Shown in pieces: positions 1-4,298 of a DNA stretch of 64,000 nucleotides. Position 1 is the stretch's first letter, and each line of letters starts with the position of its first letter. The notes under the pieces were generated by a model that saw nothing but the letters and a program-made list of their open reading frames with translations, had not been told where the DNA came from and ran no database searches. The DNA lies in the IMG/VR virus record IMGVR_UViG_3300030098_004828, positions 1-64,000 of that record, one strand, 5' to 3'. Position numbers and translations under genes: made by a program.

Positions 1-705
1 CTTTAAACACATTGCATCTTTCAAAGAAGAACATATAACAAGATAAGGTTGATTATACTCTAATTGATCTATACCTTGAAGATGAGGTTTAACTTTTATG
101 AATTTAAACTTCTTATTCTTTGGTTGATAAATCTTATAGATATTATCATCTTTATCAAAATAACCATATATATAACTTTGAGCTAATAATCCCCCTATTG
201 TTCTTACTTCTCTTTTTTCATTACCTTCTTTAACCATACGGTAAAAATTAAGAGGTTTAACATTATATTTATTAAGAATATCTTCACCAATATTAAAACT
301 TAACCAAAATTCTGCATCCCAATTAAACCATTTTCTTGAATTTACATGTTCTACTTTAAATTTTGCTTCTGGTTTTATAGTAGATTGCGTATATTCACCT
401 TTATCTGTAATAAATTTATTATAATCTTGACCTATTTTAAATACTGCTTTAGAGTAGTCTATATTAAATAGTTCTTTAACTAAATCAATTTTATTACCAC
501 CTTTACCTGTTGAAAAATCTTTAAACTTATATTGACCTTTATCCACAAATACCCACATGCTTGGAGTTCTTTCAGTAGGATGAAATACAGATTTAATCTG
601 CACATTCTGTCCATTCAGTCTTTCTGGTAAATCCAGATAGAACTCAAACACCCACGTACTTGGAACTTTAGATCCATCTAATATGAGATTCTTTGTACTT
701 ATCAT
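1..705 (-). CDS. DNA primase, crAss-like TOPRIM type (truncated at window edge)
   Basis: Not in ORF track (no stop in window). ATG at 705 gives MISTKNLILDG...SVFHPTERTPSM...FKDFSTGKGG (degenerate primase Zn-binding domain); last residues YLVICSSLKDAMCLK match the crAss-type TOPRIM motif. Confidence 0.8.
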   Translation of the reverse strand, partial: MISTKNLILDGSKVPSTWVFEFYLDLPERLNGQNVQIKSVFHPTERTPSMWVFVDKGQYKFKDFSTGKGGNKIDLVKELFNIDYSKAVFKIGQDYNKFITDKGEYTQSTIKPEAKFKVEHVNSRKWFNWDAEFWLSFNIGEDILNKYNVKPLNFYRMVKEGNEKREVRTIGGLLAQSYIYGYFDKDDNIYKIYQPKNKKFKFIKVKPHLQGIDQLEYNQPYLVICSSLKDAMCLK

Positions 706-716
706 GCTTTTAAAAT

Positions 717-746
717 AATATAGGGACAAGTAAGTGCCCCTATATT
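717..746 (-). terminator. Strong hairpin (terminator/attenuator-like) just upstream of primase ATG
   Basis: Minus strand AATATAGGGGCA-CTTACT-TGTCCCTATATT followed by ATTTT. Confidence 0.6.
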
Positions 747-757
747 GTTAACTTGAT

Positions 758-837
758 TGTATTGACTGTTATTATGCGGTATTCACTCCGTTGCAGGACA
801 GCCAATACACCTCTTACTAGGTAATATTATCCTGCAA
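758..837 (-). ncRNA. Putative pseudoknotted structured RNA element
   Basis: Two crossing helices (837-830 with 798-791; 809-799 with 768-758) plus two small hairpins. Confidence 0.5.
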
Positions 838-839
838 AA

Positions 840-1562
840 TTATAATTCAAAATCAGAACCTGACCCTGAATCTGCTTTAAATGGTAATTCATCAGCACCA
901 TTTGGATTAACATCTTTTTTAACTAAAGCTTTAACATGCACAGCACGATCAAACTTAAGAAGTCTAGAGTTTTCTTTATCCAATGCTTCCATTGCAATAC
1001 CATCTTTAGATATACGTGGTAAATAAAGATCATTATTTACATAACCTTCTTTATTTTCCCATTCACGTCCACCTATACACATATTTATAAATTTAGAACC
1101 TTTTTGATTTTCAGTAAATAGATTATTACATTCTTTCATAAAATCTTCTATATTTTCTGCTTCAATAGAATCTAATCCATCTCTCATTTCTAATGTTTCA
1201 CCTAAAGTAATCATATTTTTTAAGATTTCTTGATCTCTTTGGATTTCTCTACCACTAGGTAATGTAGTGTCTTTAAATGGAAAAGGACTAATTCTTACTC
1301 TTCCAACTTGACCTTCATATCTACCAAGTGATTGATTATTATAATCTCTAAAGAAACCTTCAAAATCACCACCAACTGGTTCAGTTTCTACATGTAAATG
1401 TATATTGTATGAATCAGCATCATACGGGGTTTGATCTAATGTAATAGAATTAATCTTTACTTTATGATTTCCTGGATCTAATACAGGCTTTGTACGTCCG
1501 CTTCCTGCAGACATGTCTTTAGTATTCAACATAACTTTCTTTTTTAAATTTGTTTCACTCAT
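840..1562 (-). CDS. Single-stranded DNA-binding protein-like
   Basis: Follows a Sak4-like ATPase; beta-rich; acidic tail containing DELPF (Bacteroidota SSB-type tail) and ending DFEL. Confidence 0.55.
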   Translation of the reverse strand: MSETNLKKKVMLNTKDMSAGSGRTKPVLDPGNHKVKINSITLDQTPYDADSYNIHLHVETEPVGGDFEGFFRDYNNQSLGRYEGQVGRVRISPFPFKDTTLPSGREIQRDQEILKNMITLGETLEMRDGLDSIEAENIEDFMKECNNLFTENQKGSKFINMCIGGREWENKEGYVNNDLYLPRISKDGIAMEALDKENSRLLKFDRAVHVKALVKKDVNPNGADELPFKADSGSGSDFEL

Positions 1563-1567
1563 ATTAA

Positions 1568-2251
1568 TTAATTTTCATATTCAATAATTGCATTCTTAAC
1601 ACGTTGTAATGAATTTTCTATACGTGCATCATCAAACATACCGTCTGGTGATTTACAAGTATTTTCTCCATTATTAACTGTTTCAAATACATAACTTAAC
1701 TTATCATCTTCTCCTTTGACAACTTTGCCAAATAGAACTATAGAGAATAGACCTTCTAAAGTTAAAGCATTATCTATCATTTTACCTACAGTTTTTGCTT
1801 TTACTTTTCTATGTCCATTCACATCTGTTGATTCTTCAGAGTGTGTAAGGAAGAATATATATAAGTCATCTCTCATATCTTTAGGCATCTTAGCAACTTG
1901 TGCAAGATTCTTTGCAATAGAGGTAAACTTATCATAACCTTTCTCATCAGCTCTATCAAAGTATTCAAAACTGGACATATATTGCCAGTCATCAATTACT
2001 AGATTTTTTATATGAGGCATTTTATCATTAACATGCATCATGGCTTTCATAATTCCTGCAGCTGTGGCTGTAGCAGCCATATTACCATTAGGATTATCTT
2101 TACCAATCATTGTATAATTCTTTTTCCATCCTTTAAATGGTAAAGGTTTATTTGCAATGTTAATAATAAATGTCTCTTCAGGACGTAAATTCCTTATAGA
2201 CGTTGATTTACCTGACCCGGAGTCAGCTATAACTAAAACAGAATGTGCCAT
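1568..2251 (-). CDS. AAA_24/Sak4-like ATPase (ssDNA annealing/recombination)
   Basis: Walker A ADSGSGKST, Walker B LVIDD, FLTHSE, terminal TCKSPDGMF typical of this family. Confidence 0.8.
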   Translation of the reverse strand: MAHSVLVIADSGSGKSTSIRNLRPEETFIINIANKPLPFKGWKKNYTMIGKDNPNGNMAATATAAGIMKAMMHVNDKMPHIKNLVIDDWQYMSSFEYFDRADEKGYDKFTSIAKNLAQVAKMPKDMRDDLYIFFLTHSEESTDVNGHRKVKAKTVGKMIDNALTLEGLFSIVLFGKVVKGEDDKLSYVFETVNNGENTCKSPDGMFDDARIENSLQRVKNAIIEYEN

Positions 2252-2748
2252 TATTTACTTAATTTTTGGTTTATACTTAATAATGCTCTTTCAATACCCA
2301 TAAGAACATCTACTATTTCTCTTTTTTCTGGATTTTTAATTAATTCTGGTTCTTTAATAGGTGATCTTCTACTAGTTACATCATTAATTACTTTTAATTC
2401 ACTTACAGGTACAATATGTCTTTCAAATCCTGAACTACTTGTTACTATTTCATATTCTTCAGCCCAATGAGCATTATGTTTTAATAAATATAATGTTCTT
2501 TTTGGATCTTCTGAATCATATTCTATACTAACAAATTCTGTGTAGATATCTCTACCTTTTTGTAGTTCACTAGGAAAGAAAGATACATGTAATTCATCTT
2601 TTCCTGATGGTCTATATGCCATCTTAGGTATATATAGAGCATTTATATTTGCGGAAGATTGGAAATAATCTTCATGCTCTTCTCTTAATTTTAATACTTT
2701 TGCTTTACGCTCTGCTGGAGTCATACTTTTATTTTTTGTTGTTACCAT
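2251..2748 (-). CDS. Hypothetical protein in replication operon
   Basis: 165-aa ORF abutting both neighbours. Confidence 0.7.
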   Translation of the reverse strand: MVTTKNKSMTPAERKAKVLKLREEHEDYFQSSANINALYIPKMAYRPSGKDELHVSFFPSELQKGRDIYTEFVSIEYDSEDPKRTLYLLKHNAHWAEEYEIVTSSSGFERHIVPVSELKVINDVTSRRSPIKEPELIKNPEKREIVDVLMGIERALLSINQKLSK

Positions 2749-2751
2749 ATA

Positions 2752-3705
2752 TTATCTTCTTTGTTCTTGAGGTGGCGTATCCATCTCTATTATTTGCATT
2801 CTTTCAAACTGAGCTTTAAAGAAACTCATACGTGTATCACCATTTCTTGCTTTAAGGAAATGTAATACTAATGTTTTGTCATCTTCTATTATATATCTAT
2901 CAGGTCCATAATATCTAATCTTTTGTTTAGCAGGCCGGTTAATACCTATTAAAGTATCAGCATGTTGTAACATTGCATCTGAACCAAATATATCTGATTC
3001 TAATACATAATTACCATACTTACCGTTCTGTGCTCTGTCTGGATTATCTATATTTCTATTTAATTGTGATAAACATATAAACATACAAGGATATTTACGT
3101 TTCATCTCTGTAAAGAACTCACCTAATTCAAATAACATATCTAATCTGTTATTTTGATAAGGTGCTCTTTTAACAAGAATACTATGATCCAATGTGATAA
3201 TAGTTTTCTTTTGATGAGTATTCATATAAATATCAACTTGATCTCTCATTTGATTTACAGTCATTGGTGTAGTTATTTGATCTACAGGACTTTTGATTCT
3301 ATCTTTAGCATACATATGACATTTTTCAAATGTTTCTTTAGTGAGTTTCATTCCTGCACTACACAACTCTTTATAAGTTTTACCAGTTACCGAAGAAAAC
3401 TCTCTTAATGCTGTAGTTCTACCTACCATTTCAAAACTAAATTCTAATACTCTATAATCTTCTTCAGGATTAAGAATAAAAGACTCTCTAATTATTTGAT
3501 CTTTAATCAATGTTTTACCAGAACCAGGTCTTCCCCCAATTACAGTAAGAGTATTCCACTCTAATCCATCAGTTACTGCATCATTAAATTTAGGCCATGG
3601 AGTTTGTATAGATTTCTCTTTACCACTCTGCCTAGCAAGCATATATTTTAATGCATCATTAAAAGCTTGATATTGTCCGTCCCATGCTGGTTTAACTTTA
3701 CTCAT
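2752..3705 (-). CDS. dnaB: DnaB-family replicative helicase (ATPase domain only)
   Basis: GGRPGSGKT, FSFEM, ITLDH, LSQLNR, LKARNG motifs. Confidence 0.9.
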   Translation of the reverse strand: MSKVKPAWDGQYQAFNDALKYMLARQSGKEKSIQTPWPKFNDAVTDGLEWNTLTVIGGRPGSGKTLIKDQIIRESFILNPEEDYRVLEFSFEMVGRTTALREFSSVTGKTYKELCSAGMKLTKETFEKCHMYAKDRIKSPVDQITTPMTVNQMRDQVDIYMNTHQKKTIITLDHSILVKRAPYQNNRLDMLFELGEFFTEMKRKYPCMFICLSQLNRNIDNPDRAQNGKYGNYVLESDIFGSDAMLQHADTLIGINRPAKQKIRYYGPDRYIIEDDKTLVLHFLKARNGDTRMSFFKAQFERMQIIEMDTPPQEQRR

Positions 3706-4298
3706 ACTACATTTTCTTTAAAATGATCTTTTTCTAATTCAGTTATACCATCACGAACCATGTCACAATAATCAGCTAATTCTGAATGTTTTACTTTATT
3801 TTTATCTGATTTACATATAAAGTATTGACTAGTTTTCATATACATATATTCTTTTTCTCTATATTCATTAACATACATAACAGTTGCATGCGCAACTTCA
3901 TCCCATGTATAATCATAAGTATCAAAGAACCATCTAAATGCATTTTCTAATGTCTTAACATTTTGTCTACCTGGTTTACCACTTGGTAATTTACCTGCAG
4001 GAAATGCTTCTCTATATATTTTAAGCATTTCTGGATAACCTTTGCCTAATAATTGAGTGCTAGTTCTTTTTTTTGCAATTCTAAATAAATTATCATATTT
4101 AGCACAAATTCTTTTACCTTTTGCACTTAATGTAAACTTTGGTTTTTTATATATCACCAACTCTAAATCAATTAGTTTTTGTGCCAATCCTTTCTTGTTA
4201 TCTAAAGGAAAAGAAATACTATTCTTTATCCCGTACAAGAGAAGTAATTGGTTCGGTGTAAGTTTGTCTTTTAATATCTTCTGGAACAGTTCTAACAT
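3702..4298 (-). CDS. Putative replication initiator/helicase loader-like protein
   Basis: Likely start MLELFQ at 4298; N-terminal wHTH-like part plus helical C-terminal domain; ATGA-coupled to dnaB. Function inferred from context. Confidence 0.45.
   Translation of the reverse strand: MLELFQKILKDKLTPNQLLLLYGIKNSISFPLDNKKGLAQKLIDLELVIYKKPKFTLSAKGKRICAKYDNLFRIAKKRTSTQLLGKGYPEMLKIYREAFPAGKLPSGKPGRQNVKTLENAFRWFFDTYDYTWDEVAHATVMYVNEYREKEYMYMKTSQYFICKSDKNKVKHSELADYCDMVRDGITELEKDHFKENVV

What the first reader, a model, noticed from the sequence alone, without database searches (positions are those of the whole stretch)
717..837. Pseudoknot plus terminator-like hairpin between SSB-like gene and primase
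Seen (minus): P1 TTGCAGGA/TCCTGCAA (8 bp) crossed by P2 TGTATTGGCTG/CAGTCAATACA (11 bp, one G-U), inner hairpins ACCT-AGTAAG-AGGT and CGG-AGTGAATA-CCG, then a 12-bp hairpin ending 11 nt before the primase ATG. It fills the whole intergenic gap of an otherwise tightly packed operon. I could not fit it to hammerhead or HDV-like ribozyme layouts. Inference: a cis-regulator of primase expression (compare the T4 gene 32 pseudoknot read by SSB), a 3' stability element or an unclassified small RNA.
Basis: partly seen in the sequence, partly recalled or inferred. Interest (0 to 1): 0.6.

Follow-up and report, generated by a model that had tools for sequence, protein, structure and literature searches.

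The report
Pseudoknot RNA kissing a terminator hairpin
Between the single-strand-DNA-binding-like gene and the primase gene of some marine crAss-like phages sits a conserved, roughly 125-base folded RNA: a pseudoknot whose inner hairpin loop is exactly complementary to the loop of the terminator-like hairpin behind it. It matches no catalogued RNA family and probably tunes transcript ending or read-through into primase.

Summary
Across 30 distinct relatives the fold holds: 98% of cells pair, against 37-46% in slid controls. Seventeen of 36 pairs change on both sides, including pairs in both crossing helices P1 and P2.

New here: the invariant loop AGUAAG of the first inner hairpin is the exact complement of the invariant loop CUUACU of the 3' hairpin. 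Pseudoknot and hairpin always occur together, so I read them as one unit of about 125 nt. It occurs once per genome, on the sense strand, and matches nothing in Rfam 15.

Relatives always keep the SSB-like to primase gene order, with a terminator-like hairpin 7-20 nt before the primase ATG. What lies upstream of that hairpin is an exchangeable cassette. This type A unit alternates with plain terminators among near-identical phages (at least 7 gains or losses). More distant relatives carry other structured cassettes.

Best reading (about 0.4): a terminator-coupled intercistronic element that sets read-through into primase and/or 3'-end formation of the SSB-like gene's message. Rivals are an autonomous small RNA, a protein operator, a ribozyme or a nuclease-blocking knot. 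Function is inferred; nothing was tested experimentally.

The parts
840..1562 (-). Upstream gene: SSB-like protein, 240 aa, with a conserved acidic/aromatic C-terminal tail (D-F-x-L invariant)
   Evidence: ORF. PHROG 378 single-strand DNA-binding protein at E = 4e-4. No Pfam match. AF2 model at pLDDT 59 with top Foldseek hits PrgE, RPA and SsbA at E = 0.006-0.1. Invariant D237, F238 and L240.
830..837 (-). P1 5' strand (UUGCAGGA); starts 2 nt after the stop codon
   Evidence: Sequence. Helix 1: 3 of 8 pairs change on both sides. Sixteen haplotypes.
823..829 (-). J1, an A/U-rich joining strand (UAAUAUU) with invariant U and AU positions
   Evidence: Invariant columns T10, A12 and T13 of alignment A2.
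809..822 (-). Hairpin Ha: 4-bp covarying stem with the invariant loop AGUAAG (818-813)
   Evidence: All 4 pairs change on both sides. The loop is invariant in 30 of 30 sequences.
799..808 (-). P2 5' strand (GUAUUGGCUG; U809 can add an 11th pair)
   Evidence: Helix 3: 6 of 10 pairs change on both sides and 99.7% of cells pair. Sixteen haplotypes.
791..798 (-). P1 3' strand (UCCUGCAA), directly abutting P2; U-CCU is invariant
   Evidence: T41, C42, C43 and T44 invariant.
777..790 (-). Hairpin Hb (CGG-AGUGAAUA-CCG): variable in length, carries GNRA loops in some relatives, and is absent in L107, L109 and L116
   Evidence: All 3 pairs change on both sides. Alignment.
769..776 (-). J3, an A-rich joining strand (CAUAAUAA), nearly invariant
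   Evidence: C63, A64, T65, A67 and A69 are conserved in at least 90% of sequences.
759..768 (-). P2 3' strand (CAGUCAAUAC; A758 can add an 11th pair)
747..757 (-). Linker, variable in length (about 8-30 nt) and sequence; often carries AGUUAAC
   Evidence: Alignments.
717..746 (-). P3: 11-12-bp hairpin with the invariant loop CUUACU (734-729), the exact complement of the Ha loop (proposed 6-bp kissing loop); terminator-like
   Evidence: Twenty-six of 30 stems are identical. Found only at this locus in the genome. Called terminator-like in the second genome copy. The best partner for its 5' half always includes AGUAAG:CUUACU in the 22 sequences scored. It always co-occurs with the pseudoknot.
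706..716 (-). U-rich tail between P3 and the primase start
   Evidence: At least 5 U in 8 in 25 of 26 relatives where P3 is the last hairpin, but only 4 in 8 in the 3 relatives where a second terminator follows.
1..705 (-). Downstream gene: DnaG-type primase (N-terminal 235 aa; runs off the window and the record start)
   Evidence: PF01807 Zn_ribbon_DnaG at 29.3 bits (cut-off 24.9). phrog_12622 DNA primase at E = 2e-20.

Best explanation
What it is (high confidence, about 0.9). It is one folded RNA unit of about 125 nt, transcribed in the sense direction as part of the replication-gene operon of a marine crAss-like phage. The unit is an H-type pseudoknot (P1 crossing P2) with one hairpin inserted in each loop (Ha, Hb). 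A variable linker follows, then hairpin P3, whose loop CUUACU can form six Watson-Crick pairs with the Ha loop AGUAAG (a kissing loop).

How it works (inferred, about 0.4). Every relative has an intrinsic-terminator-type hairpin 7-20 nt before the primase start. The basic job of this junction is therefore to end or thin out transcription between the SSB-like gene, whose product is presumably needed in bulk, and the primase, presumably needed in small amounts. In type A phages P3 plus its U tract is that terminator. It is weaker than the plain terminators of sister phages. The pre-folded pseudoknot docks on its loop as soon as the loop is made. This couples formation and stability of the terminator hairpin, and so read-through into primase and the stability of the terminated 3' end, to the folding state of the pseudoknot.

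What sets that state is not shown. The candidates are a ligand, a host factor, or the ribosome that terminates 2 nt upstream of the P1 5' strand.
For: Shown: all five helices are conserved, with covariation in P1, Ha, P2 and Hb. The top covarying column pairs are the annotated ones, and no further helix emerges. About 8% of paired cells are G-U (counted); these would be A-C mismatches on the other strand, so the fold belongs to the sense transcript. Both loops are invariant in 30 of 30 sequences while the adjacent stems show 16-18 haplotypes. A perfect 6-nt complement between two given hexaloops has a chance of about 1 in 4096 (my arithmetic). duplexfold independently picks AGUAAG:CUUACU as part of the best partner of the P3 5' half in all 22 sequences scored before the script stopped. 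Pseudoknot and P3 co-occur both ways: all 18 model hits in the protein-fished loci carry P3, and the 18 pattern-fished metagenome contigs that were searched (of 19) all carry the pseudoknot. There is one copy per genome. All 76 related loci keep the SSB-like to primase order and end the gap with a hairpin plus a U-rich tail. P3 meets the terminator scan in the sister copy. P3 is about -15 kcal/mol against -19 to -24 for most type B terminators. The P3 U tract is kept (at least 5 of 8) in 25 of 26 loci where P3 is the last hairpin, and is degraded in the 3 loci where another terminator follows. Established knowledge: an internal terminator upstream of dnaG keeps primase low in the E. coli rpsU-dnaG-rpoD operon.
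Against: There are no expression data for the gap. RNA-library contigs of relatives cover only coding parts at 939-4000. The window's own P3 narrowly misses the terminator scan. The kissing loop has no covariation, because both loops never vary, so it rests on complementarity and co-occurrence only. No conserved mutually exclusive (anti-terminator) pairing was found: UGUCCU:GGGGCA is possible in most sequences but not all. In three loci (L026, L033, L035) the unit lies 63-67 nt from the ATG with a second terminator in between and without a good U tract. It is still intact there and has evolved compensatory changes in P3 (L035). That argues for a function that needs neither termination at P3 nor closeness to the primase start. 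The near-invariance of the P3 stem sequence is not explained by a purely structural role. The unit is dispensable, because sister phages have a plain terminator instead.
Confidence: 0.4

Rival explanations
1. An autonomous non-coding RNA module: a 3'-UTR-borne small RNA or a binding platform or decoy for a host or phage factor. Its function would be independent of primase, and it simply rides at the end of the SSB-like gene's transcript.
For: It behaves like a cassette. It has been gained, lost or exchanged at least 7 times on the SSB-gene tree. It can be stacked with other structured cassettes: F+A in L007, F+A+B' in L035, and A+B' in L026 and L033. It stays intact when a second terminator separates it from primase. 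Many unpaired positions are invariant, as in RNAs that bind something specific. A structured 5' domain followed by a hairpin and U tract is the usual small-RNA architecture.
Against: No promoter is conserved upstream; a TAnnTTTG-like box overlapping the stop codon is present in only some sequences (read from the alignment). There is no evidence of a discrete transcript. No target or partner is known. It occurs only at this one junction, always in the sense direction.
Confidence: 0.28
2. A translational or transcriptional operator bound by a phage replication protein: the SSB-like protein, as in T4 gene 32, or the primase itself.
For: Its position between the two genes. A pseudoknot serves as the nucleation site in the T4 gene 32 precedent (established knowledge). 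The invariant P3 stem and loop would suit sequence-specific protein recognition.
Against: It is not in the leader of the SSB-like gene. Only about 11 nt of unstructured RNA lie before the ATG, and the linker varies. Types A and B alternate among phages whose SSB-like and primase sequences are 85-97% identical, so no protein partner covaries with the element.
Confidence: 0.08
3. A self-cleaving ribozyme of an undescribed class that processes the polycistronic transcript between the two genes.
For: A compact double-pseudoknot fold with invariant junction nucleotides. A patchy, cassette-like distribution in phage intergenic DNA beside other unknown structured RNAs, as is often seen for small ribozymes (established knowledge).
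Against: No match to any ribozyme family in Rfam, even at E up to 10. The helix order does not fit the HDV-like plan, and the hammerhead core is absent (sequence). Nothing points to a cleavage site.
Confidence: 0.07
4. A nuclease-blocking knot. Either it is a constitutive 3'-end stabiliser of the SSB-like gene's message, or it is an xrRNA-like block to 5'-to-3' decay that protects the primase message.
For: The 5' end is tucked into the P2 loop (P1) and a hairpin loop is tied to a downstream element. This resembles the two long-range pairings of exonuclease-resistant RNAs (a resemblance from memory, not tested). An A-rich J3 beside a G-C-rich P1, and an A/U-rich J1 beside an A-U-rich P2, fit triple-helix-stabilised pseudoknots (sequence).
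Against: A plain G-C hairpin does the 3' job in sister phages. Where a B' terminator follows, the unit is internal. No decay data exist.
Confidence: 0.1
5. A DNA-level signal (replication origin or primase-loading hairpins in single-stranded DNA) rather than an RNA.
For: It lies inside the replication module, occurs once per genome, and has palindromic P3 DNA flanked by A/T-rich sequence.
Against: Wobble G-U pairs are frequent and strand-specific. Some Hb hairpins carry GNRA loops. Pseudoknot covariation is not expected for an origin. The locus is not at a turn of the cumulative GC skew (minimum near 13 kb, maximum near 110 kb). The element is replaced by unrelated hairpins in phages with nearly identical primase N-termini.
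Confidence: 0.03

Closest known systems
Internal terminator before dnaG in the E. coli rpsU-dnaG-rpoD operon (intercistronic attenuation of primase)
   Same: A terminator-type hairpin sits inside an operon directly upstream of a DnaG-type primase gene. This is the likely logic of the junction in all relatives.
   Different: Here the hairpin loop is tied by six complementary bases to a conserved upstream pseudoknot, and nothing comparable is known there. The hosts and operons are unrelated. This is an analogy from established knowledge, not homology.
Regulatory kissing loop of cobalamin riboswitches (L5-L13; Rfam AdoCbl-II RF01689)
   Same: A folded sensor domain contacts the loop of a downstream regulatory hairpin through loop-loop pairing. 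There is a weak local sequence likeness around CUGU-CCUGCAACGG.
   Different: The score is 15 bits against a gathering score of 36.5. The model's closing helices are not formed. There is no four-way junction and no B12 box. The CCU that kisses L13 there is paired into P1 here. It is not a member.
H-type pseudoknot riboswitches with an embedded hairpin or triple helix (preQ1-II, SAM-II/SAM-V)
   Same: An H-type pseudoknot with stems that stack directly. An A-rich third loop lies beside a G-C-rich first stem, and a hairpin is inserted in a loop.
   Different: No Rfam match to any of them even at E up to 10. It is twice their size and has a second long-range loop-loop contact. No ligand-related gene context. 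The triple helix is inferred from composition only.
T4 gene 32 autoregulatory pseudoknot
   Same: A pseudoknot next to a phage single-strand-binding-protein gene within a replication module.
   Different: In T4 it lies at the 5' end of gene 32's own leader, followed by a long unstructured A/U tract that gp32 coats. Here it lies 3' of the SSB-like gene, the unstructured tract is about 11 nt, and the element is dispensable in sister phages.
IncI-alpha/IncB plasmid repZ/repA control (a long-range pseudoknot between an upstream hairpin loop and the initiation region of a replication gene, triggered by termination of an upstream reading frame)
   Same: An upstream hairpin loop pairs with a sequence just before a replication gene. 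An upstream reading frame stops immediately before the structured region (a stop codon 2 nt before P1).
   Different: There is no antisense RNA and no leader peptide. The target lies in a hairpin loop, not next to a ribosome-binding site. In L007 and L035 another cassette separates the stop codon from P1. This is an analogy only.
Flavivirus-type exonuclease-resistant RNAs (xrRNA)
   Same: Two long-range pairings: the 5' end pairs into an internal loop, and a hairpin loop pairs with a downstream element. Together they give a closed, knot-like topology.
   Different: There is no three-way junction of the xrRNA type and no sequence likeness. It is a bacterial phage element. The resemblance is recalled from memory and was not tested.

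Membership tests
H-type RNA pseudoknot (structural class) | Two helices whose strands interleave (5'-S1, 5'-S2, 3'-S1, 3'-S2), both real | tested here: met
   P1 is 837-830/798-791 and P2 is 808-799/768-759. P1 has 3 pairs and P2 has 6 pairs with changes on both sides. 95-99.7% of cells pair, against 37-46% in slid controls.
Kissing-loop complex | Two hairpin loops with Watson-Crick complementary sequences | tested here: met
   Ha loop AGUAAG (818-813) and P3 loop CUUACU (734-729), both present in 30 of 30 sequences. duplexfold recovers the pairing in the 22 sequences scored.
Kissing-loop complex | Pairing supported by covariation or by probing | tested here: inconclusive
   Both loops are invariant, so no compensatory change can be seen. 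P3-loop invariance in the pattern-fished sequences is partly by construction, but the 20 protein-fished loci show it too. Chemical probing was not possible.
Intrinsic (rho-independent) terminator | A G+C-containing stem-loop directly followed by a U-rich tract | tested here: met
   Met by the scan in the second genome copy (11 pairs, 4 G-C, loop of 6, tail TTTTTAAGAT) and by the U-count rule in 25 of 29 relatives. The window's own copy narrowly fails the scan: counted after the 11-bp stem its tail has 5 T in 8, and the 12th A-U pair may shift the window the scan counts.
Intrinsic (rho-independent) terminator | Transcripts end at the U tract | not testable with these tools
   Only assembled contigs of RNA libraries were available, and none covers 1-938.
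Cobalamin riboswitch, AdoCbl-II (RF01689) | Score at or above the family's gathering threshold | tested here: not met
   15.0 bits against 36.5, with E = 0.64 even when only 161 nt are searched.
Cobalamin riboswitch, AdoCbl-II (RF01689) | Four-way junction closed by P3 with the B12 box | tested here: not met
   The model's outer helices are marked non-canonical in the alignment. The covariation-supported helices are incompatible with that junction.
HDV-like ribozyme | Nested double pseudoknot in the order P1-P2-P3-P3'-P1'-P4-P4'-P2' | tested here: not met
   The order here is P1-Ha-Ha'-P2-P1'-Hb-Hb'-P2', so the hairpin precedes the P2 5' strand and nothing lies between P2 and P1'. No Rfam hit at E up to 10.
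Hammerhead ribozyme | Three-way junction with the conserved CUGANGA and GAAA core | tested here: not met
   The core motifs are absent from 706-839. No Rfam hit.
T4 gene 32-type translational operator | A pseudoknot at the 5' end of the SSB gene's own leader, followed by a long unstructured A/U-rich tract reaching its ribosome-binding site | tested here: not met
   The element lies 3' of the SSB-like gene, and only 11 nt lie between P3 and the primase ATG.
T4 gene 32-type translational operator | Specific binding by the single-strand-binding protein | not testable with these tools
   This needs a binding assay. Indirectly disfavoured, because the cassette type does not follow the SSB-gene tree.
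Any Rfam 15 family | A match at gathering score | tested here: not met
   No match at gathering score in 20 related loci. Only sub-threshold hits in the permissive scans of the window's own element and of two related gaps. No tRNA or tmRNA.

The most novel reading that the evidence does not exclude
The pseudoknot is the sensor domain of a new riboswitch-like class, sensing either a ligand or the terminating ribosome. Its output is delivered through a kissing loop onto the loop of an intrinsic terminator. If so, the replication module of marine crAss-like phages would carry a swappable set of such RNA sensors: types A, C, D, E and F, all at one junction.
Probability: 0.15. Interest if true: 0.85.

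Novelty: new variant of a known kind. Interest (0 to 1): 0.62.

Why it matters
Structured RNAs of uncultured marine phages are almost unexplored. This one has the marks of a functional RNA: two crossing helices with compensatory changes, invariant junction nucleotides and a second long-range contact. Yet it matches no catalogued family.

It sits at a junction where related phages exchange at least five different structured cassettes and plain terminators. That makes the junction a natural experiment on how primase and SSB expression is set in crAss-like phages.

If the kissing loop to a terminator hairpin proves regulatory, it would be an unusual expression platform. It would also be a compact, portable part for RNA engineering. 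If the unit instead acts in trans, it would be a new phage small RNA.

Tried and rejected
1. Rfam. Permissive scans of 500-1100 and 700-860, a gathering-level scan of 20 related loci and permissive scans of two other gaps gave nothing credible. The best hit, AdoCbl-II at 15 bits, was rejected on score and on structure.
2. tRNA or tmRNA: none in the window.
3. Repeated regulatory element: the P3 hairpin (3 mismatches allowed) and covariance model R1 each find one copy per genome equivalent.
4. DNA similarity to cultured phages: none for 1-3000. No protein-level hit for the SSB-like gene. The helicase is nearest to crAss-like phages at about 34% identity.
5. Expression. Two marine metatranscriptome runs hold contigs of relatives over coding parts only, and none over 1-938, so they are uninformative.
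6. Anti-terminator search. Consensus folding of alignments truncated before the P3 3' arm gives no conserved alternative partner for the P3 5' arm. UGUCCU:GGGGCA is possible in many sequences but not all.
7. Extra helices: the all-against-all covariation scan returns only the annotated pairs plus phylogenetic noise.
8. Read-through or frameshift extension of the SSB-like gene. In frame, a UGA follows after 18 codons in the window. Type A gap lengths differ by non-multiples of 3 (132-139 nt and more).
9. Alternative TTG start at 729 for primase: the frame is not kept in relatives (tail lengths).
10. A Bacteroidota-type -7 box (TAATTTTG) overlapping the stop codon is not conserved in the alignment.
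11. Origin of replication: the locus is not at a GC-skew turn.
12. Literature: three full-text searches found no description of this motif.
13. More diversity: a second protein-based scan returned essentially the same contigs.

Full report
**The sequence.** On the minus strand the SSB-like gene (840-1562) stops at 842-840, and the primase gene starts at ATG 705-703.
- P1: 837-830 with 798-791.
- P2: 809-799 with 768-758. It crosses P1.
- Hairpin Ha: 822-809, loop AGUAAG.
- Hairpin Hb: 790-777.
- A 12-bp hairpin, here called P3: 746-717, loop CUUACU. It ends 11 nt before the ATG.

The neighbouring genes are a DnaB-like helicase, an unknown ORF, a Sak4-like annealase and the SSB-like gene. They are packed with gaps of 5 nt or less, or overlap. 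The gap folds far better than shuffles (z = -4.2). The nested minimum-energy fold cannot show P1.

**The genome.** The window is the first 64 kb of a 245,646-nt IMG/VR record. GC content is 30.5%. The terminase, portal, head protein and proteins of 2,700-3,300 aa, together with a helicase closest (about 34%) to crAss-like phages, point to a marine crAss-like phage. The host is probably a member of the Bacteroidota, but that is an inference. The record is two collinear genome equivalents at 77-90% identity. A second, diverged copy of the element lies at about 125,471-125,633 (83% identical).

**Conservation.**
- A protein-based scan returned 80 related loci. In the 76 where both genes could be aligned, the SSB-like to primase order is kept.
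- The gap varies from 34 to 341 nt and is modular.
- Pattern scans for the P3 hairpin added metagenome contigs, giving 30 distinct sequences.
- On this alignment 98.0% of cells pair, against 37-46% when partners are slid by 1-3 columns.
- Seventeen of 36 pairs change on both sides, and no shuffle out of 500 reaches the observed covariation.
- By helix, pairs with changes on both sides: P1 3 of 8, Ha 4 of 4, P2 6 of 10, Hb 3 of 3.
- P1, Ha and P2 occur in 16-18 haplotypes each.
- About 8% of paired cells are G-U, which fits only the sense strand.
- An all-against-all scan finds no further helix.

**The 3' hairpin belongs to the same unit.**
- P3 is nearly invariant in sequence; 26 of 30 stems are identical.
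- It occurs nowhere else in the genome.
- Its loop CUUACU is the exact complement of the Ha loop AGUAAG. Both are invariant in all 30 sequences, including the 20 loci found by protein only.
- The best duplex between the upstream domain and the P3 5' half included this pairing in all 22 sequences scored before the script stopped.
- A covariance model of the pseudoknot alone (R1) hits only loci that also carry P3. The pattern-fished contigs that were searched all carry the pseudoknot.

I therefore read the element as one unit of about 125 nt: an H-type pseudoknot plus a kissing loop. The kissing loop rests on complementarity and co-occurrence, not on covariation, because neither loop ever varies.

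**Context that bears on function.**
- In every lineage the gap ends with a hairpin and a U-rich tail 7-20 nt before the ATG. There is no room for a promoter after it.
- The type B gaps of sister phages are plain G-C hairpins, mostly -19 to -24 kcal/mol. P3 is about -15 kcal/mol.
- P3 is called terminator-like in the second genome copy. The window's own copy narrowly fails the scan.
- The U tract after P3 is kept in 25 of 26 loci where P3 is the last hairpin. It is degraded in the 3 loci where a further terminator (B') follows.
- On a tree of the SSB-like gene, type A needs at least 7 gains or losses. At least 3 are forced by well-supported branches. It is interleaved with type B.

The cassette is therefore exchangeable and dispensable, and no flanking protein covaries with it. 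Any trans-acting partner should then be something shared by all these phages or their hosts: RNA polymerase, ribosome, nucleases or a metabolite.

**Mechanism (inferred).** The junction's base function is most simply intercistronic attenuation and 3'-end formation between a protein presumably needed in bulk and one needed in small amounts. This is the same logic as the internal terminator upstream of dnaG in E. coli (established knowledge). In type A the terminator hairpin is weaker, and its loop can dock on a pre-folded pseudoknot. This ties hairpin formation and stability to the state of the pseudoknot.

The P1 5' strand begins 2 nt after the stop codon in the window. The G of the conserved GYAGG lies 4-8 nt after the stop in most relatives. 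A terminating ribosome would therefore cover it, which is one possible input. In L007 and L035, however, another cassette separates the stop from P1. No conserved anti-terminator pairing was found.

The three A+B' loci argue that the unit has a role that depends neither on P3 terminating nor on closeness to the primase start. One of them, L035, has its own compensated P3 changes. This keeps the autonomous-RNA rival strong. I put the terminator-coupled reading at about 0.4.

**Comparison with known families.**
- Rfam 15 gives nothing at gathering level.
- The best sub-threshold hit, AdoCbl-II, scores 15 bits against 36.5. It rests on a local likeness around the P2/P1 junction and Hb, and its helices are not formed.
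- The helix order excludes the HDV-like plan, and the hammerhead core is absent.
- The T4 gene 32 operator differs in position and in its need for a long unstructured tract.
- Three literature searches found no description.

The fold class (pseudoknot, kissing loop, terminator) is known, but the family and the combination are new.

**The SSB-like label.** PHROG 378 matches at E = 4e-4. The 850 homologues found are all unnamed and have no Pfam domain. An AlphaFold model from 21 homologues has pLDDT 59. Its best fold matches are almost all OB-fold single-strand-binding proteins, but only at E = 0.006-0.1. The conserved acidic/aromatic C-terminus fits such proteins. The label is plausible but not proven.

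**Limits.** There are no expression or end-mapping data for the gap. All type A sequences come from one fairly narrow clade (SSB-like protein 76-100% identical).

Noticed in passing
Whole record G000 (window = 1-64000); second half from about 124,782: The 245,646-nt virus record is two collinear genome equivalents (about 124.8 and 120.9 kb) at 77-90% identity, joined head to tail. Both begin inside the primase gene. It is probably a join of two related phages rather than one genome, although it is rated '100% complete'.
   Followed up: partly
SSB-like to primase gap of L039, L044, L052, L053, L060, L061, L063, L064, L065, L067, L076 (for example L052:3719-3826): A different conserved structured RNA of about 100 nt (type C) fills the same junction in more distant relatives. 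It is closed by a stem that ends just before the primase start, carries a CC(U/A)-GACG-(A/U)GG hairpin and a conserved CACUUGCG, and 6 of 15 predicted pairs covary. There is no Rfam match.
   Followed up: partly
L054, L056, L069, L081, L040 (type D); L044, L063, L067, L076 5' part (type E); L007:3727-3890 and L035:3700-3860 (type F): Three more structured-looking cassettes occur at the same junction. Type D sits inside the loop of the terminator stem. Type E is a long stem with variable inserts. Type F is about 165 nt, is closed by an 11-bp stem, and is stacked upstream of type A. None matches Rfam.
   Followed up: partly
Types A, B, C and D gaps; window 759-768 and 747-753: Short sequence motifs recur across otherwise different cassettes: AGUUAACA before the last hairpin in types A and B, CAGUUAAUAC (the P2 3' strand in A, unpaired in D), CAUAA, and CACUUG. 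This suggests common ancestry or a shared recognition site. Unexplained.
   Followed up: no
L012, L020, L026, L033, L035 (last hairpin before the primase ATG): A terminator variant (B') carries a conserved insert of about 25 nt in its loop (AAGAGCAGUAAUCUGCACGUGCACC and variants). A similar piece appears inside a type E cassette (L063). This looks like another small portable module.
   Followed up: no
L090:2097-2114 and L093:1270-1287: Unrelated viral contigs carry a hairpin with the same top and loop (GGGGCA-CUUACU-UGCCCC) followed by a T run, after what looks like coding sequence, and without the pseudoknot. Probably an ordinary terminator and a chance match of the search pattern.
   Followed up: partly
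window 844-872 (minus strand): The terminator scan flags a 13-pair hairpin in the last codons of the SSB-like gene (GATTCAGGGTCAGG...), and the same in the second genome copy. It overlaps coding sequence for the conserved C-terminal tail and was not examined further.
   Followed up: no
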